Positions 26,116-64,000 of a DNA stretch of 64,000 nt are shown here, in pieces. Position 1 is the stretch's first letter, and every line of letters starts with the position of its first letter. Below the pieces are notes generated by a model, which was given only the letters and a program-made list of their open reading frames with translations, was not told the DNA's origin and made no database searches. Position numbers and translations under genes: made by a program. Origin of the DNA: Macrostomum lignano (taxonomy: Eukaryota); contig NIVC01001629.1 in the NCBI GenBank assembly GCA_002269645.1, positions 62,001 through 126,000 of the forward strand, given 5' to 3'.

Positions 26116-26744
<629 letters not shown>

Positions 26745-37608: not shown

Positions 37609-38026
37609 TAGAATGTGGGAAATGGGGAAGTTCCAGAATATGGAAAGTGGAGAAGTTCCAGAATGTGAGGGGTGGGGAAGTTCCAGAATGCAATGGGCGG
37701 GGAAGTTCCAGAATGTGAGGGGTGGGGAAGTTCCAGAATGCAATGGGTGGGGAAGTTCCAGAATGTGAGGGGTGGGGAAGTTCCAGAATGTGAGGGGTGG
37801 GGTAAGTTCCAGAATGTGAGGGGTGGGGAAGTTCCAGAATGTGAGGGGTGGGGAAGTTCCAGAATGTGAGGGGTGGGGAAGTTCCAGAATGTGAGGGGTG
37901 GGGAAGTTCCAGAATGTGAGGCCGTGAGGGGTGGGGAAGTTTCAGAATGCGATGGGTGGGGAAGTTCCAGAATGTGAGGGGTGGGGAAGTTCCAGAATGT
38001 GAGGGGTGGGGAAGTTCCAGAATGTG
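37609..38026. repeat. 25-bp G-rich minisatellite (CCAGAATGTGAGGGGTGGGGAAGTT)
   Basis: Direct inspection. Confidence 0.95.
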
Positions 38027-38060
38027 GGCAGTCGGGTAGTTTCAGAACGTGGTAAGTTCC

Positions 38061-38127
38061 ATTGGACGGAATAGTAGCCACGTGATTGCTCTCAGCCAAT
38101 AGCGACTTACATGTGTGTGTTGCCAAT
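38061..38127 (+). promoter_or_regulatory. Candidate promoter: three CCAAT boxes and a CACGTG E-box upstream of the three-exon candidate gene
   Basis: ATTGG 38061, CACGTG 38079, CCAAT 38096 and CCAAT 38123; motif clustering only. Confidence 0.35.
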
Positions 38128-38390
38128 AGAAACGGCGGGGTGATTTCCAAGGTTGCACATGTATGCTGTTGGTGTAGGTGAATTTCAAGAATCTGAGGGT
38201 CTAAATGCCGGGAAATCATTTTTATGCATATTTTTTCAGTAAATGTCGGACAAACAGCTCACGACCTGGAGTCTATTTTTGAGGCGCAACCACGTTCCTG
38301 GAACTCCTAGTAGTACACTATTGAATAAAGGTCAATAATTGAGATTTGCGTAGTTTTATTGATCGTAGCAGTCCCAAATGGCAGGTTTAA

Positions 38391-43339: not shown

Positions 43340-44140
43340 TGCGAGCTCTCTGAAGGCGGCAACAGCATTCCTGGCCGATCACCCCAGCGCCATCCAGCAG
43401 GCAATCCGCGTAGCGGCTCGCCCGGCCGTAGCCTCGCGGCCAGGGGCCCTGCATCGTGAGTAGCAGGACGTCCTGCACTGGTTGAGAACAGTAAGCCTCC
43501 GCCGAATGGTGTGGCCCGCCAGTTGAAGTCTTTGCCTGCGGAGGTTCTCGCTAGGTGATCGCAACAGTCTGGCAGCGCGGCGTTCTACAGGACAACTCGG
43601 ATGGAGCGGAAGGCAACCCAGGCCAGGCCCCTGCGTCGCGCCAAGTCCTCCTGGACACTGGGCACAAGACTGTCTAGGTACGTGAAGCGCGTGCAGCGAG
43701 GTAGAGCCGCTGCACGATCGTCGGGCGTCCCAGCAGGTGATTTTGATCCTGGCAGCTCCGCAGGTACACACATCACCTGCGTCTTCTCGATGTTCACCGC
43801 TAGCCCGACCGATGCCGCAGCTGCCACAAGGCTGTCTAGCATGCGCTGGGCTCCCTCAGCCGAAGAGGCAAGCAGCGCCAGGCCGTCGGCGTAACCCAGG
43901 AGCGACAGCGGAAGCTGTCCTCATCTGTTGGCAGGGCCCTCCGTAGCACCCCATCGAGCACCAACACGAAAAGGTAGGCCGCAAGCGTGTCGCCTTGCAG
44001 CATCCCGAGGTCGTGTTGAACAGGTCGGACAGTACGTCAGGTGCCACTACGGCGGCAAGGGTCTCCTGGTAGAGAGCTATGGTTGCTGCGACCAGTCGCT
44101 ACGGCACGTAGAATGACCACAAGACCGGTGCGAGGACATT
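43340..44140 (-). mobile_element. Degenerate RTE-clade non-LTR retrotransposon RT fragment
   Basis: Across frameshifts: ILRA.., SDLFNTTSG-MLQGDTLAAYLFVLVLD, LLGYADGLALLA (YADD changed to YADG), VGLAVNIEKTQVM, FTYLDS, RLQLAGHTIR. The 5' side is lost next to the 44.2-46.9 kb satellite. Confidence 0.85.
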
Positions 44141-44247
44141 CTGAAGAGAAAAAGGAGAGAAATTCTTCATCACTTCTTCTGAAAAGTACGAGTATAGTTA
44201 AAGTTGAATTAGCAGGGCTACAAGGTGAGACTGGAAAGGAGAAAAGG

Positions 44248-46870
44248 GTAGGGTCTGAAGGGGAGAAGAGGCTGGGGTCTGAAGGGGAGAAGAGGGTGGG
44301 GTCTGAAGGGGAGGAGAAGGTTTGAAGGGGAGGAGAGGGTGGGGTCTGAAGGGGAGGAGAAGGTTTGAAGGGGAGGAGAGGGTGGGGTCTGAAGGGGAGG
44401 AGAGGCTGGGGTCTGAAGGGGAAGAGAGAGTGGGATCTGAAGGGGGGGGAGAGGGTTTGAAGGGGAGGAGAGGGTGGGGTCTGAAGGGGAGGAGAGGGTG
44501 GGGTCTGAAGGGAAGGAGAGGGTTTGAAGGAGAAGAGGGTAGGGTCTGAAGGGGAAGAGAGGGTGGGGTCTGAAGGGGAGGAGAGGATTTGAAGGGGAGG
44601 AGAAGTTGGGGTCTGAAGGGAAGACGAGGGTGGGGCCTGAAGAGGAAGAGGCTGGGGTCTGAAAGGGGAGGATAGGGCGGGGTCTGAAGGGGAGGAGAGG
44701 GTGGGGTCTGAAGGGAAGAAGAGGGTGGGATCTGAAGGGGAGGAGAAGGTTTGAAGGGGAGGAGAGGCTGGGGTCTGAAGGGGAGGAGAGGGTGGGGTCT
44801 GAAGGGGAGGAGAGGGTTTGAAGGGGAGGAGAAGTTGGGGTCTGAAGGGAAGACGAGGGTGGGGCCTGAAGAGGAAGAGGCTGGGGTCTGAAAGGGGAGG
44901 ATAGGGCGTGGTCTGAAGGGGAGGAGAGGGTGGGGTCTGAAGGGAAGAAGAGGGTGGGATCTGAAGGGGAGGAGAGGCTGGGGTCTGAAGGGGAGAAGAG
45001 GGTGGGGTCTGAAGGGGAGGAGAAGGTTTGAAGGGGAGGAGAAGGTTTGAAGGGGAGGAGAGGGTGGGGTCTGAAGGGGAGGAGAGGCTGGGGTCTGAAG
45101 GGGAAGAGAGAGTGGGATCTGAAGAGGGGAGAGGGTTTGAAGGGGAGGAGAGGGTGGGGTCTGAAGGGGAGGAGAGGGTGGGGTCTGAAGGGAAGGAGAG
45201 GGTGGGGTCTGAAGGGGAGGAGAGGGTGGGGTCTGAAGGGGAGGAGAGGGTTTGAAGGAGAAGAGGGTAGGGTCTGAAGGGGAAGAGAGGGTGGGGTCTG
45301 AAGGGAGGAGAGGGTTTGAAGGAGAAGAGAGGGTGGGGTCTGAAGGGAAGAAGAGGGTGGGATCTGAAGGGGAGGAGAAGGTTTGAAGGGGAGGAGAGGG
45401 TGGGGTCTGAAGGGGAGGAGAGGCTTGGGTCTGAAGGGGAAGAGAGAGTGGGATCTGAAGGGGGAGAGGGTTTGAAGGGGAGGAGAGGGTTTGAAGGGGA
45501 GGAGAGGCTGGGGTCTGAAGGGGAGGAGAGGGTGGGGTCTGAAGGGGAGGAGAGGGTTTGAAGGGGAGGAGAAGTTGGGGTCTGAAGGGAAGACGAGGGT
45601 GGGGCCTGAAGAGGAAGAGGCTGGGGTCTGAAAGGGGAGGATAGGGCGGGGTCTGAAGGGAGGAGAGGGTGGGGTCTGAAGGGAAGAAGAGGGTGGGATC
45701 TGAAGGGGAGGAGAGGCTGGGGTCTGAAGGGGAGAAGAGGGTGGGGTCTGAAGGGAGGAGAAGGTTTGAAGGGAGGAGAAGGTTTGAAGGGGAGGAGAGG
45801 GTGGGGTCTGAAGGGGAGGAGAGGCTGGGGTCTGAAGGGGAAGAGAGAGTGGGATCTGAAGAGGGGGAGAGGGTTTGAAGGGGAGGAGAGGGTGGGGTCT
45901 GAAGGGGAGGAGAGGGTGGGGTCTGAAGGGAAGGAGAGGGTGGGGTCTGAAGGGGAGGAGAGGGTGGGGTCTGAAGGGGAGGAGAGGGTTTGAAGGAGAA
46001 GAGGGTAGGGTCTGAAGGGGAGGAGAGGGTGGGGTCTGAAGGGGAGGAGAGGGTTTGAAGGAGAAGAGAGGGTGGGGTCTGAAGGGAAGAAGATGGTGGG
46101 ATCTGAAGGGGAGGAGAAGGTTTGAAGGGGAGGAGAGGGTGGGGTCTGAAGGGGAGGAGAGGCTTGGGTCTGAAGGGGAAGAGAGAGTGGGATCTGAAGG
46201 GGGAGAGGGTTTGAAGGGGAGGAGAGGGTGGGGTCTGAAGGGAAGGAGAGGGTGGGGTCTGAAGGGGAGGAGAGGGTGGGGTCTGAAGGGGAGGAGAGGG
46301 TTTGAAGGAGAAGAGGGTAGGGTCTGAAGGGGAAGAGAGGGTGGGGTCTGAAGGGGAGGAGAGGGTTTGAAGGAGAAGAGAGGGTGGGGTCTGAAGGGAA
46401 GAAGAGGGTGGGATCTGAAGGGGAGGAGAAGGTTTGAAGGGGAGGAGAGGGTGGGGTCTGAAGGGGAGGAGAGGCTGGGGTCTGAAGGGGAAGAGAGAGT
46501 GGGATCTGAAGGGGGGAGAGGGTTTGAAGGGGAGGAGAGGGTGGGGTCTGAAGGGGAGGAGAGGCTGGGGTCTGAAGGGGAGAAGAGGGTAGGGTCTGAA
46601 GGGGAGGAGAGGGTGGGGTCTGAAGGGGAGAAGAGGGTAGGGTCTGAAGGGGAGGAGAGGCTGGGGTCTGAAGGGGAGAAGAGGGTAGGGTCTGAAGGGG
46701 AGGAGAGGGTGGGGTCTGAAGGGGAGAAGAGGGTAGGGTCTGAAAGGGAGGAGAGGGTGGGGTCTGAAGGGGAGAAGAGGGTAGGGTCTGAAAGGGAGGA
46801 GAGGGTGGGGTCTGAAGGGAGAAGAGGGTAGGGTCTGATCTGAAGGGGAGGAGAGGGTGGGGTCTGAAGG
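44248..46870. repeat. Purine-rich minisatellite, about 24-bp unit (TCTGAAGGGGAGGAGAGGGTGGGG), with higher-order blocks
   Basis: Direct inspection; a distinctive variant block (AGACGAGGGTGGGGCCTGAAGAGGAAG) recurs at about 44622, 44851 and 45591. Confidence 0.96.
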
Positions 46871-49463
46871 GGAAAAGAGGGTGGAGTTTGAAGGAAAAGA
46901 GAGGGTGGGGTCTAAATAGGAGGAGAGGGTTAGGGTCTGAAAGGGAAGAGGGTAGGGTGAAAGAGGAGAAAAAGAGCAAAGCAAAGAGGAATGGCAAGGA
47001 GGATGGGGGAGGAGGGGAATAGCAGCAAGGAGGATGGGGAAGGAGGGGAATAGCAGCAAGGACAAAGGAGGAAAGGAATGGCAAGGAAGATAGGAATGGC
47101 AAGGATAAGGAAGGAGGGGAAATTTAGCAGGGAATAAAGAAGAAAAAAATGAAAAGAAAGTAAGAGAATAACAAACATAGGCAAGGAAAAAAATGTCAAG
47201 CGTAGGGGGATAAGCAAAAAGAATGGGAGAATGGAATGGCAAGGTCCAGGGGTAGGTAAAAATGTTAAGGAGGTAAGAAAGAAAAATGATAATAAAAATA
47301 GGCAATATGGCAAAGAAAAAGAATAAAAAGGAATGGCATAGATCATAAAAAAGTAATTACAAGTAATAGTTAGCTGTTAGGTAGAATAGGAAAAAAGGGG
47401 ATGATATAAAAGATAAAGGGAAGCATGGCAAAAGGGATAGAAAAAGGATTCATAGGCCTATGACAAATAAGGTGGGGAAAGGGATAATAAAAAGGGAAAT
47501 AAAGGAAAAGAATATTATTAGAATAGGTAATAATTGTTTATTTATAAAAATAATTAATAATAGAAAGCATTACAATTAGGCCTAAATATTGATATAGCAA
47601 AACTATTTTTTCTAAATTAATTGCTATGCCTACTAGTGTTACTATATTCATTATGATGACAATATAGAATAGCAATAGCCTAGGTGCTAGGCCTATGTTA
47701 GGTCTATATGCAATTATGACATTGTCCATATCTAATTCATTAATAAATTATATCTTAAATAGAACCACATATTATCCCTCCTTAGTCCTTCATAGAAATA
47801 AAGGTTTCTCTTCTATTAAGCAAATCGACTGCAAAAGATTAACTAGGTGTCTAGGCCTATATAATGCTCAACAATCCAAAGGCAAAATCTTCTTGAATCC
47901 TTAGTCAGCCAGCCAATTAATTGTCCTAGAAAGTAGCTGTAGTAGATTCACATTTTATTGAGCAATGCTATAACTATAACCAATGCTTGTTAAATCAATT
48001 AATATTCAACAATCTAAAAAGGACGATCAATACTACAACATTACCTATGAAGGTCAGATGAAAAGGCTTTGTTTCTACTATAACTCTAAGGCAACAATTG
48101 CTGGCCTAGTATATCAGATGATTGCACCCAGAGCGCAGCTCCGCTGCTGACTGGTCCTGGGTCATCATGCACATTTAAATTAGCGCTTATTCCCCGTCCT
48201 ATGTAAAAGTATATATGTTCCGCATTGAAAGCAGCAAACTACCCGTAAAGCTACGACTATACGCGTAGGCTGTAGCTTTGTAAGCCACGATGCGCACGTA
48301 GTTTACCGCTTTATCGTTGTGACACGGGTGCTGCTGTTACTACTTATTACTACTGACTATTATGCACTATTAGTATCATACTGGTTCAATCTATCTAATA
48401 AAAATTAGTCGGTGCTATATAATGCTATAGTCGATATAGCTATTGCGCATTAGAGTTGGTTTCCTAGAAAACGGAAATCCACCGTATTTTGTAACACGGT
48501 AACATGTTACGGCTCGATAAGCATCGGGAGTTTTTCATGTTATATTCCCGATGTTTTTGGAAAACAGGCCTGATGCGGCAGAGGCAAATTTGTAGCGGTA
48601 GCACTTGGCAGTAATATCAGTTAAAGTTAAAGTTAATGCAATCAATGGCTGCAGACTTGGTTTATTGTCAACAGAAATGCAAGTTGGATTCGTAACAATG
48701 CACTGGCGGCTACACAACAACGAGTTTGATAGATAGGTAGTGGAAGTGGCGTGGCTGAGAGTGGCAGAGGCGTGGCCTAAGGCCGTGGCGAAGCGAGGCG
48801 GAGAGAGAGAAGGCAAGTAAACAAGTAAAGGCGGCAAGAGTCTACAAGCCTACACGGGCTCGCAAGGGTGGCGGCGGAGCAAAGGAGTCAACACAGGGTG
48901 CCAGATTGCAAAGGCTCTAAACAGGGGTCTAAGCCCGAGCGCACGGCCAGACCAGCTCGCAGCCACGGCTAGCCGTGAAATCCACTAGTCAAAAATTCTC
49001 GGCTTAGCCGGTGGATCCACCGTGGACCCACGTCCGGCTAGCCGTAGTGGCCGTGGACTTGCGATTTTTTATTGCCCCGTGCGCTACTCCGTACTAGGTA
49101 GAGTAGAGCATAATTATGAATATGGCAAATTCAGTGTACTGTGTACAAAAATACCGATTGCTGAGGAAGGACTAAAGGCATGAGCAAAAAATGGTGAATA
49201 ATTGTATTCCGCTTGGCTAATTATGAAATAAAGCATAAACCGTAATAAAAAGTACTTTGTATTTCTAATACAATACAATACATTAAATAAAATTTATATT
49301 GTTATTGATTATTGTATTGTAATAAATAATTAATAACAATGTTGATCATTGGTCGATACAAGACTTTGGAAAGTATAAAAATGGGACTGCACTTTTTAGA
49401 CACACTAGCAAATTTTAAATATAAAATGTCGAGAAAATTTTCAAGAAAAAATTATTCCTTAAA

Positions 49464-49526
49464 ATGGACTCGAACCAGAGACCTACCAAAAGCAAAGTAG
49501 GCGCCCTAACCACTAGGCCAAGAGAT
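49464..49526 (-). pseudogene. Degenerate tRNA-like sequence or SINE head
   Basis: Minus strand TGGCCTAGTGGTTAGG (A box) and GGTTCGAGTCC (B box) at tRNA spacing, with a CCTAC/GTAGG stem. The loop is 10 nt and the acceptor stem does not pair, so this is not a functional tRNA. Confidence 0.5.
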
Positions 49527-50029
49527 ATAACCACTAGGCCAAGAGTAACCATACGTCAAATGCGCTATTATAAACCTATGAGAAACCTAATAGTAAGGCG
49601 TAAGCAGGCTAAAATTGGGATTGGGACGTATTATTGGGATTGCCAGAGCACAAAAAAGCGCAAAGTACAATAATATAATTTCTTTCTAGACCTAAATAGG
49701 GAATCTTGTTCTCTAATTATTTCTAATTAAGTTATTCTTTGCTCCACCAAATGATGCTACATTTACGCATTTAATAATGCAATAGAATATGACATAAGCA
49801 TACATAAGCATAACCTCTATAAAATTATTTTCCGATTTGAAGTCTGGTTACGCAATCCAGTTACAACAAAGCAAAATGTAATTTTTAGACTTCAAATTTC
49901 AGAAGTCTGTAAAAGTAGCTCAAGACAAAATTTAAGCTTTTAGTAATAAAAAATGTCCTCATTTTCTGGTTAGGGTAAAAAGTTTGAATAGAAAACTCAC
50001 AATGTGCTGAGATATCCACGCTGGATATT

Positions 50030-50878
50030 ATACTTATCAGTAGACTATTTAATTCTTTGGTCACACCAGTTATAACGTATGGTTGTGAAATCTGGGGACC
50101 TCTAGCAACCTGTACTGAACTCAAGAACATCGACAAAATCCAAACAAATTTCTACAAATACCTCCTTAACTTACCTAAAAGTACCTGCAACTCTGTTTTA
50201 TACGCAGAACTTAATTTAACACCTATCTCTCTTACCATCTCGAACTTTTTTCTTACATACTGGCTCAAAATCAAACATAAAAAACTGAATAGTACCACTA
50301 TAGGCATCTTCGAATCAAACAACTGCCCAAACAACCCATGGAAAACCAACATCACTAAAAAACTACAAAACCTTGGTTTATCTCACCTGCTTAATTTACA
50401 AACATCGGACCCTGGTGACAGCTACAACAAAGATAAAACAACAATGACCACACAACTACTCATCTCCTGGAAGCGTGAACTCTTCAAAAAAATAGAAAAC
50501 CACACGAAAGTCATGCATTACAAAAATTGCTTCATCTATAAGAATATTTTCAAGCCTAACTTAAAAAACTACTTTCCCAGTATTTTTAGAAATAAAAAAT
50601 TCCTAGAAATTCTGCTTAAGCTTAAAACTGAGTTCTTACCAAGCAAATACATCCAAGAAAAATGCAAACTTTGTGGCAGAGATTCAGGCAATAATATCTT
50701 ACACTATACAACTGAATGTGTCGGTATACTAGATGTCAGGAAAAAATACTTTAACCAAAGCCACCTGAGCACAAGACACTTTTACAGTTTAGGCTATGCT
50801 ACAAACGAAAACAAAAATAAAAAAGATTTGCTAGCTATTGAGAAGATCTATAAACTCATAGCAAATCTCCCTCCTTAA
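50030..50878 (+). mobile_element. 5'-truncated LINE: ORF2 C-terminal region (post-RT), CR1/L2-like
   Basis: Open 273+ codon frame LFNSLVTPVITYGCEIWG..IDKIQTNFYKYLLNLPKSTCN..LYAEL with a terminal C-X2-C..H..C knuckle (CKLCG..ILHYTTEC); no RT core upstream. Confidence 0.8.
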
Positions 50879-51720
50879 CCGACATGAAAATTATAGAGAA
50901 CACCATGTGTACCACGCTGTTGCTGACCGTCTTACACCAATTGAATCCCTGGTTACATTGATACTCTACTTGCTATTCCCTCTTACTACTATGCATCTCT
51001 TGCTATTAAGTCCCTACCCCGAGTAAAATCGAGTAAACAATACCGGTGCAATCCATCCCGTATTACGCGTTTATTTATGTAAAAATTTTCTTTTTCTAAT
51101 CGCGCCTTATTTTTATTTAAGCACTCTATTTTTGGTTATTTCTTTCTTACATATTTGCTTCAAAAATACCCTTCATATTTACTCCGCGGTCCCCAGCAAT
51201 AGCTCCAGCAATAGAAAAAAACAAAGCAACTGTGCCACTCGAGAAATAATATACACTTTACAGATGTTGCTATTGGGAGTTTGTGCCACGCAGTTTCAGT
51301 TTTGTGCCGGTTCGTTTTTTGTGGATAAAATCGATTAAAAGTACAAAAACACTGGAAACCTATTGCTGAAGTTATTGCTGAGTTCTAGTGACATGGAACA
51401 ATGTCAGAAAGTTGTGCCATTTTGAAAAGAAAATTATTTGGCACATTACACGGTTGTGCCACAAACATTTAACGATGTGCCATACTCATGGAAGCCACGC
51501 CACAGATTATAAAATTGGAGTAAATTACTATACGCCCTCGTTAGTGAGAATGCGAAAAAACAAATTTTGAATAATATATCCACGGACTACAAAGATTGAA
51601 TGTTCAAAGAGATTTACAGCCTACTTAAAATGTAATGCATAAGTTATCGCCTAAGTACTTGTACAATAAATATTTTACAGGAAAAAATTAAGCAGCTACG
51701 GCACGTGCAAGTTTAAGCTC

Positions 51721-54489
51721 GGGTCTGTATAAAAGCAGGGCACCATTGGCACATTGGACACCCCTTATGTTAACAAAAATCGAGTTTTGATCGTTGTTTT
51801 GCTTGAATAAATATACTTTGGCTTTCGAATCAAAACGTAAATATTTATTTATAATTGCACTTTTTCATATACTTCTAACAACCATGAGATTGGTAGTATC
51901 AACAAGTTTTATTCTACATTTAAATTCATTTCTTATCTTGCTTTATTGTCGAACTACTTTCGGTACGTCATTTTCATTTACCTAGTTGGTGCACTTACAG
52001 AAAACATAGAAGCATTAAATGCCGTTTCTTGTTCTCAATAAACGTTGGAAAAAGTGAGCAGCAGACTAGTTGCAGAATTTTATAGCCGGACATGGCATAT
52101 TTGACAATTTGCAGCTGCTCTGGCTTGTTTACTGCCTTTCCATAAATCAACAGCAATGGTGAAAGTGAATCTAATCCTTCTCTCTCTCTCTCTCTCCCAT
52201 AATGTTAATGTTTGATTTGTTGTTAATATGGACTTTTAAAATCCCCCGTGTCTTAAATAAAAAAACGAATATTTTTTTTAAGTTATGATGTCCATCAAAA
52301 TGCAATTAATTAATGTTTTAAAAACATTAAAACTCAATAAATTATTTATTCTCTTATCAAATAGAATCCAACTCTAGAATCTTTTTCAAGGAAAGAATAC
52401 TAACTCCTTAATATTCAATATGGATGATAATAAAGCAGTGCATTACTTTTTCAATTTAGAGAATCTAACAAGGAAATAAATATAATTTAGTACAATACCA
52501 TTGTAAGCAAAAAACCATAAGTTTACAGGTACATTTTTTTGTAAAGATAGATACAGCTGAAAAATTAAAATTTGACAAAAGAATACCACAAACACTAAAA
52601 ATGGGGAGAAAAAGTATAACAAACATTGGCATTAATAAAAAAGTTATAAATATTGCAGCTGAGCAAATGAAATTAGCAATTAAATAATGCAATGAGTTAA
52701 ATGATAAATAACAAAGAAATGCTAAATAACATCTAGCAATGTATATTAAAGCAATTGAAGTGCACTCTGAGTTGAAAGGCTTACAACTCATAAAGTACAG
52801 TTTAAATGCAATGTAACTTTTTATTTATTTGTAACTTTATAACAATAGAAGTCATTACCATAAGCAATTGTATGAAAAGTTGCTATTAATAGTCTTATGT
52901 ACTTTATCTCTACTCTAAGAGCTAACTTTCTATAAATATATATGATTCCTTGTATAAAATTAGGGATTCTTTAAAAAATTCATGCTGCAATATGCATATA
53001 TCACACTCTTGACCCAAGAAAATTATTGAAAGTGGTCAACCAATTAGCACAAAAAAATTATAGACAGGGCTGTAATGGTGCAAGTGGTGTTTCGGCACAC
53101 CACTTAAATTTTTGGAGCAGTTACACTAAAGAAAATTATTATTTTATAAAATTAAGAGAGGCTAATAAAATTAATAAAATTAGTAGGGCTTGAATTGAAT
53201 AATATGCTGTGAAGACGCAAAATTGTAAGCCAAGAAGGCTAGAATTAGGGTTAGCAATTAGGCAATTAGGCGAACTATAGACATTAAGGAATGTGTAGGT
53301 ATTAAATAAATAAATCATGCAGGTGCTAATAGTAGCTTAAAACCTATCACTTGGTCCCTTAGAATGCCATAGTTTTGGACATTAGAATTAAAAAATAGTG
53401 TTCTACTGATTGGGAACTTGTTCTTATTGGGACACTTCTCATAAATATAGAAATATTAATATAAACAATACTAATAAATCTGCCAATTAAAACTTTGTGG
53501 CATTTGTAGGATTTTAGAAAAAGGAAATATACCCTGCAACATACGTGCAGAATATTTATGTGCTAAAGGATTTAGGCCTGAAATAAATGACAATAAATGT
53601 TATGTGAAGATGGTTTATATGTTGTTTATTCAAAGCGTCACATAACTTTTCAGTAAAAATACTTCTTGGTCTGTAAGGTAGATTTTTTACTTAAATGCTT
53701 GAATTTTTTAACTCATAATTTAAATGATTAGCACAATTTCTTAAATATCATGACTTGGCAAATTATTCATAATAAAAGGTTTTCTTACAAGGATTGTATA
53801 TAAAGAAGAGACTGTAATTTGAACTTTCACTGAGTAGCTATTCCTTTTTTGTTGGTTGAAATCATAGAAAAAGTAATTGAACTAATAAAAGAAGAAGCTT
53901 GGAAATTATCAATTTAATCATCATCTTACAAAGTAAAAAAACTTTTTGGGTGCAATTTTTTCATCAAATAATCTGCCAATGTATTAACTTTTTTAATATA
54001 GAAATACTTGCAACTTGGAATATCCAAAGTTCGTTCTTCATGAAGTAATCCTAACAAAATAAGTTGTGGTTTTTTGATAAGAGCAGAATGCTTCATCATT
54101 TTATGGAAAATTGAGTTCTGACTATTAGTTTGATCATTTTATATTATATATCAGGCATATTTAGCATTAAATCGGTACGCCTGTAGTACAGAACCTTCGG
54201 GGTAGTAAAATCACAGTGTAATAGCATTGCAAGCTGCAGTTTTTGCATACATGTGCGATTATTTTAAAAAATCGAATGCCAAATTAAACATGTACAAAAA
54301 ACGATAATACAAAGAATATTTAACAAATCATCTATCACGAAAGCAAGGATGTCATTTCTAATATTATCATTTTTTTAAATTATTTAAAAGGATCTCTGCA
54401 AGTTTATTCTGCATTTTCATATCTAATTTTGTTATAAAAAGGGGTGTCCAATGTGTCCAATGTGCCAGTGCCAGCTTTTATACACACCC
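51721..54489. mobile_element. Nested 2.77-kb non-autonomous Mutator-like TIR element
   Basis: Imperfect TIRs of about 55 bp, GGGTCTGTATAAAAGC..TGGCACATTGGACACCCC versus GGGGTGTCCAATGTG..GCTTTTATACACACCC; exact 9-bp TSD TTTAAGCTC at 51712-51720 and 54490-54498; no intact ORF. Confidence 0.87.
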
Positions 54490-55387
54490 TTTAAGCTCTA
54501 TAGGATATACATGTACATGCCCCTGCCACGGACAAGGGCGCCAGGGCGGTAACGGTATTATGTGAACATTTTTTAGAAATAAATTAAATTGAATTTTCTG
54601 CCGTAACTAAGCATTTAGCATTAAATGTTTTTCTTTGAAACTTGCAAACTTGTAAAGCTATCAGAAGCTTAGCTTCTTGCATTACATTAGGCCTAGGCCT
54701 ATCTAGCCTAGTCTTAGTCTATATTCTCTTTAATGGCTCAGATCAAATATCAGATATTTCGATTATTTTATGAATACTATTAGTAGCTTAATAAAATATA
54801 CTAGAATGCATAATTACTGGACATTATTATTTATTGTGTCAGTACTTATTCTTTAAACCAGATCCAAATTAATAACTAAATCATTGTTGTAATTAATAGT
54901 TAGTCAATAGGAGTGAGGAAAAGTCTTATGGCATACATAAGCTTGAATTTTGATATACAGCATACCTTATATGGCACACATACTCTTATCTAGACCTAGA
55001 AAGGGTTGTGTCATACTACTATTATTTATACAAATACAAAAATCAGATCTATCTAGACTAAGTTATGAAAATTTTAGTTTTTTAAAAGAAATAAATACTA
55101 GGCCTGGGAAAGTTTGAAAAAAATAAAATTATGAATACTATTCACTTTGTAATAGTTACTTTGTAATTATTTTACAAATATATTCTAAATATACAATAGA
55201 TATAAATATGCCATGCCCATAGCAATATTCAATGATCAATGTTTTATTGATCAATGAACATTTTTGTCAATGCTAGAATAAGCTACAGAATAGGAAATTT
55301 GATTTCTAAATTACCATTGGAATATACTTGGTGAACTGGACTACTAATGTACTTTTCCTAGTATATAATCAAAACTATTAGTGGTTA

Positions 55388-55548
55388 AGCCATGCCCAGC
55401 CATGCTCAGGTATGCCAACTATGCCCAGCCATGCCCAGCCACGCCCAACTATGCCCAGCCATGCCCAGCTATGCCAACTATGCCAACTATGCCCAGCCAT
55501 GCCAACTATGACCAGCTATGCCTAACTATGCCCAGCCATGCCCAGCAA
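55388..55548. repeat. Short satellite block (ATGCCCAGCC / AACTATGCCCAGCC), the reverse complement of the 58187-61280 array
   Basis: Same unit family in opposite orientation. Confidence 0.9.
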
Positions 55549-56939
55549 TGTCAACTATACTAACTAGTGCGTTGGCCTATTTAACCCGTTTGTGTGCACA
55601 CATGTAAGAACTTTTTGCTCTCCACAAATGGCACCAGTATGTAGCTACTGCCCGCTAGTACATGTATTTTTGCCAAGGCACTAATTGAGTTTCATCATGC
55701 AAACACTAATGGACTTAAAGTTGAATTTGTGCCTTTGGGCTACACTGTTGACAGGGATCACTATGTTGCCAAGTTTGCTATGGATTATAAATGCATTTTT
55801 ATGAATAATGTAGAGGTTCATTGTTTTTTCTTGTCTATTGTTTTTTTCTGACATTACGAGTAAATGCCACTGCTGTGCTAATTTTTACAGTGTGTTGAAT
55901 TAAATTACAGCAAATCTTTTAGTGCTTGTTTTAATTTGTAGCATATTTACCGCATGGACACACATGGTAGTATAGTATTAGTATATATGTACTTTACGTT
56001 TTTTTAGTATTTAGTATCTTGTTTGCTCTATTCAACATAAAACCTAGCTTACTTATTTTCACTTAATGCACAAACCTTTATTACTGTGTATGTAGTAAAC
56101 GCAATTTTAGTAGTAAATGCAAGTTTAGCAGTTCTACATTACAACGCAATTTAACAATACATTCTTCTTATTTAAGCAATTAAAACTGCTATGGTTTTGA
56201 GAAATCTTAGATTGTACTACACACAAATTCTCTTTTAAACCATTTTAACTCCATACCATGCTACTCCCATGAGTTTCTCAGAATTTCAACAAATATACTC
56301 ATTTTGCAAAGCTAATTTGGCTTTCACATTTAATGCACTATAATTTATTGTCTAAGGAGAGAATGTATGCTTTTGTTTTGTGTTCCCAACGTCTTATAAA
56401 GACTAATAAAGAAGCTTTTTTCAACCATCGAACCAAACTCTAAAAAAATCGTTTATTGGTTTTTAACAACTACTCTTAAACAGTAATAAAAATTATAAAG
56501 TAATAATAATCAATGTGTTACTAAATTTATTTTGATATGAAGTTTCAAGTTGGAAATGTATTGTTTTGGAAGTATGTAATAAGTCTCATTTATTTGATAA
56601 TTGCTAAGTACTGAGTAGCACAAAATTGCATGTAAAGAACGTAAAATTAAAGGACACCTTTTTGGACATTTTATAATGGTTAAACAGATGAATGATAGAC
56701 AAAAAGCTAATTTCAGTCAAATGAAGCTACATAAATAGCACCATACATTACATTACATAAACTGCTTCGTATGGGCTATGTACGAGTACGTCAACATGTA
56801 CACCTTGATTAATGGAACAACTTATTACTTCAAGTAGTACTAACTTCTAAATTAGAGAATAAAAAAGTTTACAATTTTACGTTTACAATTTCTCGCCCTG
56901 GTTGCACTGGACCACCTATTCTGTAACGCGCCCACTTGA

Positions 56940-58074
56940 TCAAAGAGTGTAAGGCTTCAATGGAAACCTTCTCTTTCGTCGCTGTACTGCTAGGTGCTGC
57001 TGCTGTCGGTTGAATGCAGAGAATTCACTCTTAGTCTTTGTGCTACTTACTTCTATAGCAGAGCAGATAGCTTCGACGGTATCGTTATCTCCTGCAGGAG
57101 TAGCAGTAGTAGTTAGACACTGAGGTCTATTTTCTTGTGGTTCAGGAACGCCCTGCTTCTCGACCACGTGTTGAATCTTCCTTATGTCCTGCACCGTCTC
57201 GTGCATCTGCTGTTGCATGGACTTCAAGCTTTCATCCATCTGTCGCAGCTCTTGCTGCATGTTGCGCATGCTTTCTTCCATATTCTGCATTTGCTGCTGC
57301 ATGTTGCGCATTCCCTTAATTTGTTGCATTTGCTGCTGCACGTTTCAAATGTACTCCTCCATTTGCTGCTGCATACTGCGCATGTTTTCAATGTGCTGAT
57401 TCTGTTGAACTTCGGGCATCAGTTGCTGCAACTCGGGTAGCGAGCCGTCAGCTTGCTGACCAGCAGCAGCCTGCGGATCGGCAGCTTGGTTCTCACTAAG
57501 GCTTAATTGAGTGGTCCTTTGTAGTAAAGTGTTGACACTTTGACCTTCCATACCGCGAAGTTTCAAAGAATGCCACCAGATTGCATGTACTGGAGTTCCT
57601 GAGCCGCCCCGTACTGGGAGCCAACAGAGTGCCTGAAAATGTGCGAAACGGAGATTATATAATTTTTATTCGGGAGTAAGACAAGCGAAATTGGTAGGTA
57701 CTGTGAAGAAAGTGCAACTGTAAAAGTGTAAAGCATTTGTAATGCATATAATATAAGAAATCGAACTGCAATAAACTTGTATTTATAAAGACTACTGTGT
57801 TACTAAACTACTGGTCATAAGCGAGTAAGAGTACACTAACCGAGTCTTTAGATTTCCAGTAGACGACCTTAGAATGCCCACTGGTTCCATAGTGACTGCT
57901 CTTCAGACACTCGCACAAAACGGACTTAGCAAAAGAGGGTGGACGTCCGTCAAGCATTAACCACGCTACAAACTGGCTTTCTGGACATACATACGATCGA
58001 TCATCAGGCGCAAGCCGCACAGTCAGCTCATGTGGCAATGGGCCCCGCTCTAGTAGTTGCTCGATTAGCGCCAT
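56940..58074 (-). pseudogene. Two-exon cargo gene (58074-57841, 57632-56940) for an unknown protein with a Gln/Met-rich coiled coil; one in-frame TGA
   Basis: ATG 58074, GTTAGT donor, TTTTCAG acceptor, phase 0. ORFs 57345-57566 and 56940-57341 share one frame separated only by TGA at 57347-57345. MQQQM.. heptad-like repeats. Confidence 0.55.
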
Positions 58075-58186
58075 CACAAAATACATGCACCAGAAAAGAA
58101 AACAGCGAGACAAATAGAAAGAGGCAACAAAATATAAATACACTAAGATATAATATAATAAGTAACAAGTGAAAAAATACACTTGA

Positions 58187-61100
58187 GCATGGCTGGGCAT
58201 AGTTGGGCATGACTGGGCATGGCTGGCATGGCTGGGCATAGTTAAGCATGGCTGGGCAGAGTTAGGCAAAGCTGGGCATAGTTAAACATGGCCGGGCATA
58301 GTTATGCATGGATGGGCATAGTTATGCATGGTTGGTATGGCTGGGCAGAGTTAGGTATAACTGGGCATAGTTGGCATGGCTTGGCATGGCTGGGCATAGT
58401 TAGGCAAGGCTGGGCATAGTTAGGCATGGCTGGGCATGGCTGGGCATAGTTGGGCATGGTAGGCATTGCTGGGCATGGCTGGGCATAGTTAGGCAAGGCT
58501 GGGCATAGTTATGCATGGCTGGGCATAGTTATGCATGGTTGGTATGGCTGGGCAGAGTTAGGTATGGCTGGGCATAGTTGGAATGGCTGGGCATGGCTGG
58601 GCATAGTTAGGCAAGGCTGGGCATAGTTATGCATGGCTGGGCATAGTTGGACATGGTTGGCATGGCTGGGCATAGTTAGGCAAGGCTGGGCATAGTTATG
58701 CAAGGCTGGGCATAGTTGGACATGGTTGGCATGGCTGGGCATGGCTGGGCATAGTTAGGCAAGGCTGGGCATAGTTATGCATGGCTGGGCATAGTTATGC
58801 ATGGTTGGTATGGCTGGGCATAGTTGGCATGGCTGGGCATAGTTAGGCATGGCTGGGCATGACTGGGCATAGTTAGGCAAGGCTGGGCATAGTTAGGCAT
58901 GGCTGGGCATAGTTGGGCATGGTAGGCATTGCTATGCATGGCTGGGCATAGTTAGGCATGGCTGGACATGGTTGGCATGGCTGGGCAAGGCTAGGCATAG
59001 TTGGGCATAGTAGGCATAGTTGGGCATAGTAGGCATTGCTGGGCATAGTTAGGCATGGCTGGACATGGTTGGTATGGCTGGGCATGGCTGGGCATAGTTA
59101 GACATGGCTGAGCAGAGTTAGGCAAAGCTAGGTATAAAGCTAGGTCTAAAGCTGGGTATAGTTAAACATGGCTGGGCATAGTTAAGCAAGGCTGGGCATA
59201 GTTATGCATGGCTGGGCATAGTTGGACATGGTTGGCATGGCTGGGCATGGCTGGGCATAGTTAGACATGGCTGAGCAGAGTTAGGCAAAGCTAGGTATAA
59301 AGCTAGGTCTAAAGCTGGGTATAGTTAAACATGGCTGGGCATAGTTAGGCAAGGCTGGGCATAGTTATGCATGGCTGGGCATAGTTGGACATGGTTGGCA
59401 TGGCTGGGCATGGCTGGGCATAGTTAGGCAAGGCTGGGCATAGTTATGCATGGCTGGGCATAGTTATGCATGGTTGGTATGGCTGGGCATAGTTAGGCAA
59501 GGCTGGGCATAGTTATGCATGGCTGGGCATAGTTGGCATGGCTGGGCATGACTGGGCATGGCTGGGCATAGTTAGGCAAGGCTGGGCATAGTTAGGCATG
59601 GCTGGGCATAGTTGGGCATGGTAGGCATTGCTATGCATGGCTGGGCATAGTTAGGCATGGCTGGACATGGTTGGCATGGCTGGGCAAGGCTGGGCATAGT
59701 TGGGCATAGTAGGCATTGCTGGGCATAGTTGGGCATAGTAGGCATTGCTGGGCATAGTTAGGCATGGCTGGACATGGTTGGTATGGCTGGGCATGGCTGG
59801 GCATAGTTAGGCAAGGCTGGGCATAGTTATGCATGGCTGGGCATAGTTATGCATGGTTGGTATGGCTGGGCAGAGTTAGGTATGGCTGGGCATAGTTGGA
59901 ATGGCTGGGCATGGCTGGGCATAGTTAGGCAAGGCTGGGCATAGTTATGCATGGCTGGGCATAGTTGGACATGGTTGGCATGGCTGGGCATAGTTAGGCA
60001 AGGCTGGGCATAGTTATGCAAGGCTGGGCATAGTTGGACATGGTTGGCATGGCTGGGCATGGCTGGGCATAGTTAGGCAAGGCTGGGCATAGTTATGCAT
60101 GGCTGGGCATAGTTATGCATGGTTGGTATGGCTGGGCATAGTTGGCATGGCTGGGCATAGTTAGGCATGGCTGGGCATGGCTGGGCATAGTTAGGCAAGG
60201 CTGGGCATAGTTAGGCATGGCTGGGCATAGTTGGGCATGGTAGGCATTGCTATGCATGGCTGGGCATAGTTAGGCATGGCTGGACATGGTTGGCATGGCT
60301 GGGCAAGGCTAGGCATAGTTGGGCATAGTAGGCATAGTTGGGCATAGTAGGCATTGCTGGGCATAGTTAGGCATGGCTGGACATGGTTGGTATGGCTGGG
60401 CATGGCTGGGCATAGTTAGACATGGCTGAGCAGAGTTAGGCAAAGCTAGGTATAAAGCTAGGTCTAAAGCTGGGTATAGTTAAACATGGCTGGGCATAGT
60501 TAAGCAAGGCTGGGCATAGTTATGCATGGCTGGGCATAGTTGGACATGGTTGGCATGGCTGGGCATGGCTGGGCATAGTTAGACATGGCTGAGCAGAGTT
60601 AGGCAAAGCTAGGTATAAAGCTAGGTCTAAAGCTGGGTATAGTTAAACATGGCTGGGCATAGTTAGGCAAGGCTGGGCATAGTTATGCATGGCTGGGCAT
60701 AGTTGGACATGGTTGGCATGGCTGGGCATGGCTGGGCATAGTTAGGCAAGGCTGGGCATAGTTATGCATGGCTGGGCATAGTTATGCATGGTTGGTATGG
60801 CTGGGCATAGTTAGGCAAGGCTGGGCATAGTTATGCATGGCTGGGCATAGTTGGCATGGCTGGGCATGACTGGGCATGGCTGGGCATAGTTAGGCAAGGC
60901 TGGGCATAGTTAGGCATGGCTGGGCATAGTTGGGCATGGTAGGCATTGCTATGCATGGCTGGGCATAGTTAGGCATGGCTGGACATGGTTGGCATGGCTG
61001 GGCAAGGCTGGGCATAGTTGGGCATAGTAGGCATTGCTGGGCATAGTTAGGCATGGCTGGACATGGTTGGTATGGCTGGGCATGGCTGGGCATAGTTAGA

Positions 61101-61280
61101 CATGGCTGAGCAGAGTTAGGCAAAGCTAGGTATAAAGCTAGGTCTAAAGCTGGGTATAGTTAAACATGGCTGGGCATAGTTTGGCATGGCTGGGCATGGT
61201 TGGCATGGCTGGGCATAGTTATGCATGGCTGGGCATAGTTATGCATGGCTGGACATGGCTGGGCATGGTTGGACATGGCT
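58187..61280. repeat. 3.1-kb satellite built from 10-bp GGCTGGGCAT / AGTTAGGCAT monomers with a 1318-bp higher-order duplication
   Basis: Identical repeat-derived ORFs are offset by 1318 nt (58509 vs 59827, 58873 vs 60191). Confidence 0.96.
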
Positions 61281-63280
61281 AGGTCATACTTATTCTTGTA
61301 TTAACAGATCATTATAGAAGGCTATAACAAAAAGCATTAGCTATTAGGCCTATAAATTAAAATAATTATTGAATAACAATAATCAATGTATTATAGATAC
61401 TAGTATTTCTAATATTCATAAGAAAATATATTATAAAAAGTAAATAGGGCCTAGTCCTATAACTACAAAGATAAAAAATGCTAATAATTATTTTTAAGAA
61501 ATGATACCTTTTTAAAAAGCAATTAAGTGAGTGTGGTTATTAAAATAAAAATATAGTTAAATCTTTAAGAGAAACAATATCAATGAGTGCCTTATATAGT
61601 AGATTAGTTCAAGGAACGTATGCAAATTATATTTAATTAATTAATAATCAGTAAAACTAGAAAATACATAAGATCATAATGTATAACCAATAGGCAGATA
61701 TTTAAAGTTAAAGTAGTACAAATTATTTTGAATAACCAATTTTGGTAGACTTAAAATGTTAGCATATTTTATAACAACTAGGCCTATAGGCCTAATAAGC
61801 CAATAATTGTCTATAAATTTAAATTTGAACTAATAAAAAATAGTACATTAATTAGTATACTATTTTTAATTAAGTATGATCCTAGTCAGATTTACTAGGG
61901 CCTACTTCTAGTTAGCCAATTGTGCCATAACTAATACAATTAAGTGCAAGAAAATGCATTGTCCACTCTAGATTTTAGCTCATAAATAAAAAAATTATAA
62001 CTTGATAATTCCCTGCTGGCACTAAAAATCCTTGGGTATTTTACATGCTGCAACTAGAAGTAAGTGTCAAAGAACTAAAACCAAATACTAAATAAGGGTA
62101 TCAGTTTACTTAAATTTATTTTCTATAAGTTGCTAGGCCAGTAGGCCCTAGGCCTATTCAACTGTCTTTCAGCTAGTTTAAAGTTCAAATGAAATATTAC
62201 TTTATATAAAAACGAAAAATACTACTAGACAAGCTTGTAATCCTAAAGTCGAAATCTTACAGTTATTAAAATAATTATACACTAAAGTTAATACTAAAAT
62301 AAGATTGCTACGCGTACGCCTGTTTTGAGCCTAAATGAAAGACCCCATTGACGCAGCGCTCTACACGCTAACTTGAATTTTAAATTAGCGCGAATTTGCC
62401 GTACGAATAGTAGCCAAATTATTCATACGGTACCGTACGAATAGTCACTTCCGTTTTAAAGTCTACCTAAAAATTTTCTATTTATTGTACAAGTACTTAG
62501 GCGATAACTTATGCATTACATTTTAAGTAGGCTGTAAATCTCTTTGAACATTCAATCTTTGTAGTCCGTGGATATATTATTCAAAATTTGTTTTTTCGCA
62601 TTCTCACTAACGAGGGCGTATAGTAATTTACTCCAATTTTATAATCTGTGGCGTGGCTTCCATGAGTATGGCACATCGTTAAATGTTTGTGGCACAACCG
62701 TGTAATGTGCCAAATAATTTTCTTTTCAAAATGGCACAACTTTCTGACATTGTTCCATGTCACTAGAACTCAGCAATAACTTCAGCAATAGGTTTCCAGT
62801 GTTTTTGTACTTTTAATCGATTTTATCCACAAAAAACGAACCGGCACAAAACTGAAACTGCGTGGCACAAACTCCCAATAGCAACATCTGTAAAGTGTAT
62901 ATTATTTCTCGAGTGGCACAGTTGCTTTGTTTTTTTCTATTGCTGGAGCTATTGCTGAGGACCGCGGAGTTCATATTTAATGCATAATAATTGCCAGCAA
63001 TCCTTTCATCTGATTTTTTTGTCTGATTAATACATATAAACTTATTTTTATCACCTACGAATTCAAGTGACACCATACTTGTCTTTTAATCCCTTACTTA
63101 AATACTTTTTGCTTTGTTTGCCGTTAAAGATTTTTGAAGTTTCGTAGAAAAAAAAAATTGGCGCTCTTTCAAATACTATATTATTGTAAAACTCGCCGCA
63201 CAGATCCCATTCTATCGAAATAATATTAATATTAAATACACTGACATATACTGGCCAAACAGGCTTCTTGCCTGAGCCAA

Positions 63281-63306
63281 ATTACTACTACTACTACTAC
63301 TACTAC
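63281..63306. repeat. (TAC)n microsatellite
   Basis: Direct inspection. Confidence 0.85.
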
Positions 63307-64000
63307 GCTGTGCAACTTAGTAGCTAGCTCGATCGTTCGATCTCGTTCGTTCGCTTTGCTCATACTATTCAGTCTATTCATACATTCTTTTATCGTAACT
63401 AGCTATAATTATTTGCTAAGCAGATTAACTTAAATTGCAAATTTGTATTACAAACAATTCAAAGCACTTATTCGCACTAATACTAGAAAAAAACTTTCTT
63501 TGAATTCACTATTCATCTTTTGTGCCTGTGATTGTTAACTACTAACTAGGCCTACTACTATCCTACTACTAAGCTTAATTCTAAGTAAAATAAGCAGGTA
63601 AGGACGAGCCTGTACAATATGTGGTAGGCAGGGGTACTATCACTATATGACAGATTGACAGGGTCAGTATCACAAAAATTACTCTAAATAATTTTAGCAG
63701 TTGTTATTGTTCCAGTGACCATAGGCCTATAAATAACAAAATGGTTATTTTTATGGTTAACACATAAGACACTATCTGGGCCTAGGGTTTTAACTTAATT
63801 CTAGTATTTTTCTCCTTTATCTCCATTATACTACTAAAAGATAATAAATAGACTTTACATTAATACATTATTATTATCTATTATATATTTAGAGCTGCGG
63901 CCATCTTAGTATGTGGCTATCTCTGTCATGTGCTATTTGTTAAACTCATTGTATGTGCATTTTTTAGCTTTTTTAACTTTCCAAAAATGAAAATTAGCAT

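What the first reader, a model, noticed from the sequence alone, without database searches (positions are those of the whole stretch)
51172..62979. Young 11.8-kb Pack-MULE/Foldback-like element in an animal genome, carrying a spliced cargo gene and no transposase
Seen: 491-bp TIRs that look near-identical (one mismatch noticed), a perfect 10-bp TSD, and an interior with a nested TIR element, inverted satellite blocks and a two-exon gene model. No DDE transposase ORF is visible. Established: long TIRs with a 9-11-bp TSD define Mutator/Foldback elements, and gene-carrying Pack-MULEs are well described mainly in plants. Inference: a recently mobilised non-autonomous vehicle that moves host-like genes and satellite DNA.
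Basis: partly seen in the sequence, partly recalled or inferred. Interest (0 to 1): 0.8.

Follow-up and report, generated by a model that had tools for sequence, protein, structure and literature searches.

The report
Transposase-less long-TIR transposon in flatworm
This is an 11.8-kb mobile DNA element in the flatworm Macrostomum lignano with near-identical 491-bp inverted ends and a 10-base target duplication: a fairly ordinary transposase-less, Mutator-type transposon that carries satellite DNA, a second nested transposon and an orphan, already interrupted gene for which no host origin could be shown.

Summary
There are 491-bp terminal inverted repeats (TIRs) with one mismatch, a perfect 10-bp target-site duplication (TSD) TTCATATTTA, a nested TIR element with its own 9-bp TSD, two satellite blocks in inverted orientation, a two-exon reading frame and no transposase. 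The window comes from Macrostomum lignano (assembly Mlig_3_7, contig NIVC01001629.1).

The best reading is a non-autonomous cut-and-paste DNA transposon of the Mutator superfamily, with a Phantom-, Rehavkus- or foldback-like layout. It sits about 300 bp downstream of a truncated LINE ORF2. Each TIR carries seven copies of TGTGCC, which are probably transposase-binding sites.

The "Pack-MULE with a host cargo gene" part is not supported:
- The frame looks coding but contains an in-frame TGA.
- It has no Pfam domain and no homologue among 5.8 billion indexed proteins or 1.84 billion representative proteins.
- Its GC3 is about 0.50. Three host genes in the same window have GC3 of 0.74-0.91.

"Young" is plausible but unproven, because TIR identity does not date an insertion. 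Copy number, an autonomous partner and an empty site could not be tested, since no tool reaches the rest of this genome. I rate it a new member of a known kind, of modest interest.

The parts
51172..51181 (.). Left copy of the 10-bp target-site duplication TTCATATTTA
   Evidence: Identical to 62970-62979. Chance about 3e-6; unique for this geometry in the window.
51182..51672 (+). Left 491-bp terminal inverted repeat. Terminus CTCCGCGGTCC. Six direct copies of TGTGCC at TIR positions 50, 101, 122, 232, 274 and 295, plus one inverted copy at 259.
   Evidence: One mismatch against the right arm. No 6-mer reached 7 copies in any of 1000 shuffles. Motif spacings are 51, 21, 110, 42 and 21 bp.
51712..51720 (.). 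Left 9-bp TSD (TTTAAGCTC) of the nested element
   Evidence: Read; identical to 54490-54498.
51721..54489 (.). Nested non-coding TIR element of 2,769 bp. TIR starts GGGTSTGTATAAAAGC and contains GGCACATTGGACACCCC.
   Evidence: Inverted repeat found; alignment (about 65 bp, about 80% identity with indels). No ORF above 119 codons.
54490..54498 (.). Right 9-bp TSD (TTTAAGCTC) of the nested element
54499..55387 (.). AT-rich unique spacer between the left end and the small satellite block
   Evidence: No significant inverted similarity to the right spacer: best score 35.4 bits, within the range of 30 shuffles (mean 29.1, highest 42.5).
55388..55566 (-). Small satellite block of 179 bp (10- and 39-bp periods, C-rich strand up), inverted relative to the large array
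   Evidence: TRF; 80-85% complementary to many registers of 58187-61293.
56940..57632 (-). Exon 2 of the orphan frame. It encodes a Q/M-rich coiled-coil-like repeat (MQQQM). In-frame TGA at 57345-57347; terminal TGA at 56940-56942.
   Evidence: GC1>GC3>GC2. No Pfam domain. No homologue.
57633..57840 (-). Putative phase-0 intron of 208 bp, GT...AG, about 29% GC between exons of about 50% GC
   Evidence: Sequence; GC profile.
57841..58074 (-). Exon 1 of the orphan frame (78 codons, starting at ATG 58074)
   Evidence: On this strand, open segments of at least 100 codons cover 1119 of 1310 nt; none of 1000 shuffles reached this.
58187..61293 (+). Large satellite array of 3.1 kb (units GCATGGCTGG / GCATAGTTAG; periods 10, 20, 49 and 69 bp), with a higher-order duplication of about 1.3 kb
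   Evidence: TRF. Self-BLAST: 58187-60017 against 59497-61293, 92% identity. Identical ORFs 1318 bp apart.
61294..62478 (.). AT-rich unique spacer between the large array and the right TIR
62479..62969 (-). Right 491-bp terminal inverted repeat
62970..62979 (.). Right copy of the 10-bp TSD TTCATATTTA
50057..50878 (+). Context: 5'-truncated LINE ORF2 tail (273 codons). The element sits about 300 bp downstream of its stop codon.
   Evidence: ORF; sequence. The LINE identity rests on my reading of the motif (VITYGCEIWGP...): there was no Pfam hit and no database hit.

Best explanation
This is a non-autonomous class II (cut-and-paste) DNA transposon of Macrostomum lignano. It most likely belongs to the Mutator superfamily, closest in layout to Phantom, Rehavkus and foldback-type elements.

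Shown here: an 11,788-bp unit bounded by 491-bp near-identical TIRs was inserted as one piece into AT-rich DNA just downstream of a truncated LINE ORF2, duplicating 10 bp of target. It encodes no transposase.

Inferred mechanism: a transposase encoded elsewhere in the genome binds the repeated TGTGCC(A) motifs in both TIRs (seven per arm, several spaced by 21 or 42 bp). It pairs the ends, cuts at the CTCCGCGG termini, and integrates through a 10-bp staggered cut that is filled in to give the TSD.

The interior is accumulated baggage, not a functional payload:
- a second, smaller MULE-like element that inserted 48 bp inside the left TIR, with a 9-bp TSD;
- a 10/20-bp satellite present as two inverted blocks, one of which has expanded to 3.1 kb;
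- an intron-containing orphan reading frame that is already interrupted by a stop codon. It is as likely to be a decayed accessory ORF of the element lineage as a captured host gene.
For: - TIRs and TSD verified and far beyond chance.
- The terminus is unique to the two ends.
- No N or scaffold gap.
- No transposase-size ORF.
- TGTGCC enriched in the TIR: 7 copies, a count no 6-mer reached in 1000 shuffles.
- TSD and TIR lengths fall within published MULE ranges, and within the Phantom range that includes Platyhelminthes hosts (PMC6446971).
- The nested element's 9-bp TSD shows that elements making 9-10-bp TSDs have been active in this genome.
- Satellite arrays in inverted orientation inside long-TIR elements are a described trait of Rehavkus, Tetris and foldback elements.
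- The frame shows coding signatures but has an internal stop, no homologues and a GC3 unlike the neighbouring host genes.
Against: - Superfamily assignment rests only on TSD and TIR length. No transposase, no second copy and no related element could be examined.
- The terminus CTCCGCGG was not matched to any described family.
- The satellite blocks are about 1 kb inside the TIRs and very unequal (179 bp against 3.1 kb). The spacers between TIR and satellite are not homologous. So the layout is not a classical foldback arm.
- A single copy cannot show mobility of a family.
Confidence: 0.6

Rival explanations
1. It is a true Pack-MULE-type capture. The same kind of non-autonomous MULE acquired, at the DNA level, an intron-containing host gene (and perhaps the adjacent satellite) and has recently carried them to this locus.
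For: - The frame keeps a GT...AG intron and exon/intron GC contrast, and has coding statistics.
- MULEs are known to acquire host fragments (PMC6446971).
- The annotated M. lignano gene set excludes transcripts that overlap repeats (PMC5730564), so a parent gene could be unannotated.
Against: - No homologue in 5.8 billion indexed proteins or 1.84 billion representative proteins. The indexed collection holds an annotated M. lignano protein.
- In-frame TGA.
- GC3 of 0.48-0.52 against 0.74-0.91 for three host genes in the window.
- Extra ORFs of unknown function are common in MULEs without any host origin.
Confidence: 0.15
2. It is a non-autonomous element of a different DNA-transposon superfamily, or of an undescribed one, that happens to make 10-bp TSDs. 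It would not be a MULE.
For: - No transposase link was established.
- The terminus CTCCGCGGTCC was not matched to any known family.
- All searches outside the window were empty.
Against: From established TE classification (my own knowledge, supported for MULEs by PMC6446971), TSDs of 9-11 bp combined with TIRs of several hundred bp are characteristic of Mutator/Rehavkus/FB. hAT and P give 7-8 bp, Merlin 8-9, Transib 5, CACTA 2-3, piggyBac and Kolobok TTAA, and Polinton 6 bp with large coding content.
Confidence: 0.15
3. It is not a transposon. It is an assembly artefact or a local inverted segmental duplication in a difficult, repeat-rich, neopolyploid PacBio assembly.
For: Mlig_3_7 is a Canu/PacBio assembly of a highly repetitive genome with much redundancy (PMC5730564). 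The interior's orientation between inverted repeats, and the length of the satellite array, could be mis-assembled.
Against: - A perfect 10-bp direct repeat lies exactly at the outer edges of the arms (chance about 3e-6).
- The arm boundaries are sharp.
- The interior is 10.8 kb of unique sequence.
- There is no gap.
- Missed-adapter PacBio chimeras give spacer-less palindromes, not this structure (my own knowledge).
Confidence: 0.03

Closest known systems
Phantom subclass of Mutator-like elements (Marquez & Pritham 2010; group 20 in PMC6446971)
   Same: Recorded hosts include Platyhelminthes. TSD is 8-10 bp and TIRs reach 613 bp. A minisatellite is reported in some members. This element has a 10-bp TSD, 491-bp TIRs and internal satellite.
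   Different: Phantom is defined by its transposase. This element has none, and no link to a Phantom transposase or TIR sequence could be tested.
Rehavkus / foldback-type elements (Rehavkus in Tribolium, Tetris in Drosophila virilis, FB in D. melanogaster)
   Same: Long inverted termini combined with tandem-repeat arrays in inverted orientation. The arrays can expand greatly and unequally.
   Different: - Rehavkus is listed with a 9-bp TSD; FB also has 9 bp, from my own knowledge. This element has 10 bp.
- Here the TIRs are unique sequence with dispersed 6-7-bp motifs.
- The arrays lie about 1 kb inside the TIRs, separated from them by non-homologous spacers.
Pack-MULEs of plants (Jiang et al. 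2004)
   Same: Transposase-less, long TIRs, 9-11-bp TSD, and an internal gene-like sequence that retains an intron.
   Different: No parental host gene was found. The frame is interrupted. Its composition is unlike neighbouring host genes. The host is an animal.
Muta1 of Aedes aegypti (active animal MULE; Liu & Wessler 2017, cited)
   Same: An animal MULE with long TIRs. Repeated motifs in its termini affect transposase binding and excision (as summarised).
   Different: Muta1 is autonomous and has been tested experimentally. It has a 9-bp TSD and shorter TIRs (my own knowledge).

Membership tests
Mutator superfamily (MULE, including Phantom) | Target-site duplication of 8-11 bp | tested here: met
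   Perfect 10-bp TSD. Published range from PMC6446971.
Mutator superfamily (MULE, including Phantom) | Long terminal inverted repeats (tens to hundreds of bp) | tested here: met
   491 bp with 1 mismatch. Published range is 14-500 bp, with Phantom up to 613 bp.
Mutator superfamily (MULE, including Phantom) | Encodes, or shares TIRs with an element that encodes, a Mutator-clade DDE transposase | not testable with these tools
   The element has no transposase ORF. The rest of the M. lignano genome cannot be searched as DNA. Searches with peptides translated from the TIR and interior found nothing.
Mutator superfamily (MULE, including Phantom) | Belongs to a repeated family (other copies with the same termini) | not testable with these tools
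   No other copy in the 64-kb window. Metagenome scan for the terminus gave 0 hits.
Pack-MULE | Non-autonomous: no transposase between the MULE ends | tested here: met
Pack-MULE | Interior derives from a cellular gene with an identifiable parent locus or paralogue | tested here: not met
   No homologue at E<=0.01 in the indexed 5.8-billion-protein set. The exhaustive search of 1.84 billion representatives gave only one spurious low-complexity hit. GC3 is unlike host genes. Caveat: an unannotated parent gene cannot be excluded.
Pack-MULE | Captured sequence is potentially expressed or intact | tested here: inconclusive
   Coding signatures are present, but there is an in-frame TGA at 57345-57347. 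No transcript data were available.
Foldback / Rehavkus-type elements | Inverted termini built from, or containing, tandem sub-repeats | tested here: inconclusive
   Inverted satellite blocks exist. However, they lie outside the 491-bp homologous arms, are very unequal (179 bp against 3.1 kb), and are separated from the TIRs by non-homologous spacers.
Foldback / Rehavkus-type elements | 9-bp TSD | tested here: not met
   The TSD is 10 bp. Rehavkus is listed as 9 bp in PMC6446971 Table 1.
Polinton/Maverick | 6-bp TSD and genes for protein-primed polymerase, integrase and capsid | tested here: not met
   The TSD is 10 bp. No long ORFs.
DIRS-like retroelements (inverted terminal repeats) | No TSD; RT/RNase H and tyrosine recombinase ORFs | tested here: not met
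   A perfect TSD is present. No such ORFs.

The most novel reading that the evidence does not exclude
The element is a currently mobile animal counterpart of plant Pack-MULEs. On this reading, a Mutator/Phantom-type vehicle in a regenerating flatworm model captured an intron-containing cellular gene at the DNA level and spreads both that gene and a fast-expanding satellite to new loci. That would imply an active endogenous MULE transposase in M. lignano.
Probability: 0.1. Interest if true: 0.55.

Novelty: new member of a known kind. Interest (0 to 1): 0.3.

Why it matters
DNA transposons make up only about 3% of the Mlig_3_7 assembly (PMC5730564, Supplementary Table 4). I found no description of Mutator-like families in M. 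lignano in the searchable literature.

A structurally intact long-TIR element with an intact TSD hints that a MULE-type transposase may be, or recently was, active in this transgenesis-capable model. Such an enzyme could serve as a genetic tool and as a source of structural variation.

The element is also a clear example of a satellite array sitting inside, and potentially being spread by, a transposon. None of this is conceptually new: satellite-bearing foldback/Rehavkus elements and gene-carrying MULEs are established.

Tried and rejected
1. Homologues of the orphan frame. Pfam gave only sub-threshold coiled-coil noise. The indexed search of the N-terminal 173 aa found nothing. Exhaustive phmmer of the 307-aa product found one hit (E=9e-5) to a low-complexity repeat protein, which I rejected as spurious.
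2. Structure. Single-sequence AlphaFold2 of residues 1-173 gave mean pLDDT 40.7. That is uninformative, so I ran no fold search.
3. Copy number through proteins. I concatenated peptides translated from the TIR, the nested element and the spacers and searched the protein collection, hoping ORF calls from other copies existed. There were no hits.
4. Empty-site paralogue through the flanking LINE. The ORF2 tail is not on record and has no relatives in the collection. There is no second LINE copy in the window.
5. The TIR terminus in JGI metagenome contigs: 0 hits.
Replaced by an open-segment census.
7. Extended foldback arms. The spacers between TIRs and satellites show no inverted similarity above shuffled controls.
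8. The satellite-gene-satellite unit (55388-61293) as an independently inserted foldback element. I found no TSD at its outer edges on inspection, so I rejected this for lack of evidence.
9. A mini-intron that removes the in-frame TGA. The only GT...AG candidate is 19 nt and would shift the frame, so I rejected it (sequence).
10. tRNA and Rfam scans of 48-64 kb: nothing.
Full report
**Observation.** The two arms are 51182-51672 and 62479-62969. In ungapped alignment they match over exactly 491 bp with one mismatch (position 12, C against T). From position 492 the sequences are unrelated. TTCATATTTA lies directly outside both arms, at 51172-51181 and 62970-62979. With local base composition a 10/10 match has probability about 3e-6. 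Among 52,192 positions in the window, this is the only one where identical 10-mers flank a span of 11,788 bp. The window contains no N. The terminus CTCCGCGGTCC occurs only at the two ends. BLAST of the element against the rest of the window finds nothing.

**Source.** The LIM plus villin-headpiece ORF at 19286-21193 is on record on one contig, NIVC01001629.1 of GCA_002269645.1. That is the Mlig_3_7 assembly of the flatworm Macrostomum lignano (PMC5730564). The window corresponds to about 62,001-126,000 of that 254-kb contig. Mlig_3_7 is a Canu assembly of PacBio reads. [quoted passage not shown]

**Anatomy, left to right.**
- TSD, then the left TIR.
- 48 bp of unique sequence, which includes the left 9-bp TSD of the nested element.
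- A nested 2,769-bp element (51721-54489). Its TIRs are about 65 bp (GGGTSTGTATAAAAGC...GGCACATTGGACACCCC, about 80% identical with indels). It has a perfect 9-bp TSD, TTTAAGCTC.
- 889 bp of AT-rich unique DNA.
- A 179-bp satellite block (55388-55566).
- 1.4 kb of AT-rich DNA.
- A reading frame on the minus strand (58074-56940).
- About 110 bp of AT-rich DNA.
- A 3.1-kb array of the same satellite in the opposite orientation (58187-61293). Its periods are 10, 20, 49 and 69 bp, and it contains a higher-order duplication of about 1.3 kb.
- 1.19 kb of AT-rich DNA, then the right TIR and TSD.

The stretches between each TIR and its satellite block show no inverted similarity above shuffled controls. 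The homologous arms are therefore strictly 491 bp.

**No transposase.** Outside the satellite and the reading frame, the longest stop-free segment in any of the six frames is 119 codons of hydrophobic low-complexity sequence.

**The TIR.** Each arm carries seven copies of TGTGCC, five of them TGTGCCA. Six are direct, at positions 50, 101, 122, 232, 274 and 295, and one is inverted at position 259. No 6-mer reached seven copies in any of 1000 shuffles of the arm. Spacings of 21, 42 and 21 bp suggest helical phasing. AGCAATAG/CAGCAATA motifs recur near the tip. Such sub-terminal repeats are the usual form of transposase-binding sites. That they serve this function here is inference.

**The "cargo gene".**
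- Gene model. Exon 1 (58074-57841, 78 codons from an ATG) ends at a GT. A 208-bp AT-rich interval (29% GC) ends in AG. Exon 2 continues in phase 0 from 57632.
- Coding signal. On this strand, open segments of at least 100 codons cover 1119 of 1310 nt, which none of 1000 composition-preserving shuffles reached. All three parts show GC1>GC3>GC2. It therefore is, or recently was, coding.
- Damage. A TGA at 57345-57347 interrupts exon 2 after 95 codons, and the same frame then stays open for another 134 codons. The product would be an N-terminal region of about 140 residues followed by a Q/M-rich coiled-coil-like repeat.
- No relatives. Pfam gives no domain. The indexed 5.8-billion-protein search gives no hit. 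The exhaustive 1.84-billion-representative search gives only a spurious low-complexity hit. The AlphaFold2 model is uninformative (pLDDT 40.7). The indexed collection holds an annotated M. lignano protein, so no annotated parent gene turned up.
- Composition. Third-position GC is 0.48-0.52. The three host genes in the window have 0.74-0.91, and the adjacent LINE ORF has 0.41.
- Reading. I regard it as an orphan, element-resident and probably decaying ORF. MULEs often carry extra ORFs of unknown function (PMC6446971). Host capture is not excluded but has no positive support.

**What it is and how it works.** A perfect TSD at the outer edges of long TIRs is the signature of integration by a DDE transposase making a staggered cut, here of 10 bp. 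Published summaries give 8-11-bp TSDs and TIRs of 14-500 bp for MULEs. For the Phantom group, whose hosts include Platyhelminthes, they give 8-10-bp TSDs, TIRs up to 613 bp and occasional minisatellites (PMC6446971). Other superfamilies make shorter or sequence-specific TSDs (my own knowledge). Long-TIR elements with tandem arrays in inverted orientation that expand unequally are described for Rehavkus, Tetris and FB.

The best explanation is a non-autonomous Mutator-superfamily element mobilised in trans. The single-event insertion and the lack of coding capacity are shown. The superfamily, the binding-site role of TGTGCCA and any current activity are inferred.

The nested element, with a 9-bp TSD, independently shows that elements making MULE-like TSDs have been active in this genome. 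Its TIR contains the reverse complement of the same heptamer (TGGCACA), which may be coincidence.

**Age.** One difference in 491 bp means the two arms were identical very recently or are kept alike by gene conversion. TIRs are not regenerated from one template at each transposition, so this does not date the insertion. An intact 10-bp TSD is only a loose bound. "Young" is plausible but not demonstrated.

**Artefact.** An assembly error could affect the interior's orientation or the array length. It cannot create a 10-bp direct repeat exactly flanking sharp-edged arms around 10.8 kb of unique sequence.

**Limits.** No tool reaches the rest of the M. lignano genome as DNA. All three indexed protein searches (cargo, TIR and interior peptides, LINE tail) returned nothing, and the metagenome scan for the terminus was empty. 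Copy number, an autonomous partner, an empty site and expression therefore remain untested.

**Verdict.** It is a new member of a known kind, of modest interest.

Noticed in passing
window 50057-50878 (+), with 50879-51181 and 62980-63306: A 5'-truncated LINE ORF2 tail (273 codons, GC3 0.41) lies just upstream of the insertion. An (ACT)n run at about 63284-63306 might be the LINE's 3' tail. If so, the element inserted into the LINE 3' UTR, and other copies of that LINE could serve as empty-site references.
   Followed up: partly
window 51739-51783 / 54422-54466 versus 51182-51672: The TIR of the nested 9-bp-TSD element contains TGGCACA, the reverse complement of the TGTGCCA motif repeated in the outer element's TIRs. 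The two could be related families recognised by related transposases, or this could be coincidence.
   Followed up: partly
window 19286-21193 (+): A single 635-codon ORF encodes two LIM domains and a C-terminal villin headpiece (ABLIM/dematin-like). It has extreme composition (73% GC, GC3 0.91) beside 23-35% GC repeat DNA. Base composition in this genome is strikingly heterogeneous.
   Followed up: partly
window 2602-3297 (-) and 10729-12685 (-): An APEX2-like gene. One exon carries a GRF zinc finger. On my own reading, another exon resembles an endonuclease N-terminus. The two exons are separated by several kb that include a long GC-rich minisatellite at 10.7-12.4 kb, which stays open in several frames for up to 545 codons.
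   Followed up: no
window 44037-47305: A 3.2-kb minisatellite with GC skew of about 0.7-0.87. It is open for more than 1000 codons in two frames on the minus strand (P/S/L-rich). It is most likely non-coding. It is one of many minisatellites in the window; others lie at about 1-2000, 3400-4700, 6960-8030, 9950-10590, 26000-27000, 28870-29300 and 37600-38220.
   Followed up: no
window 32198-33376 (+): Two GC-rich ORF segments. The first (32198-32692) has a weak eukaryotic aspartyl-protease match (Pfam Asp, E=2e-4). The second (32912-33376) has no Pfam hit. Together they are probably exons of a pepsin/BACE-like host gene.
   Followed up: no
window 49440-49560: A tRNA-like fragment (…GGACTCGAACCAGAGACCTACC…) followed by a 21-bp repeat, TAACCACTAGGCCAAGAGA, present 2.3 times. 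ARAGORN calls no tRNA here, so it may be a SINE or tRNA-derived remnant.
   Followed up: partly
window 54650-55110, 61340-62160 and 63540-63790: Short AGGCCT-containing motifs (for example TAGGCCTAGGCCTA and GGCCTATAGGCCT) recur in the AT-rich DNA, both inside and outside the element. They may be traces of an unrecognised small repeat family.
   Followed up: no
window 62399-62450: Just inside the right TIR, CGTACGAATAGT occurs twice, 38 bp apart, around a short palindrome (GTACGGTACCGTAC). The left end has no counterpart.
   Followed up: no
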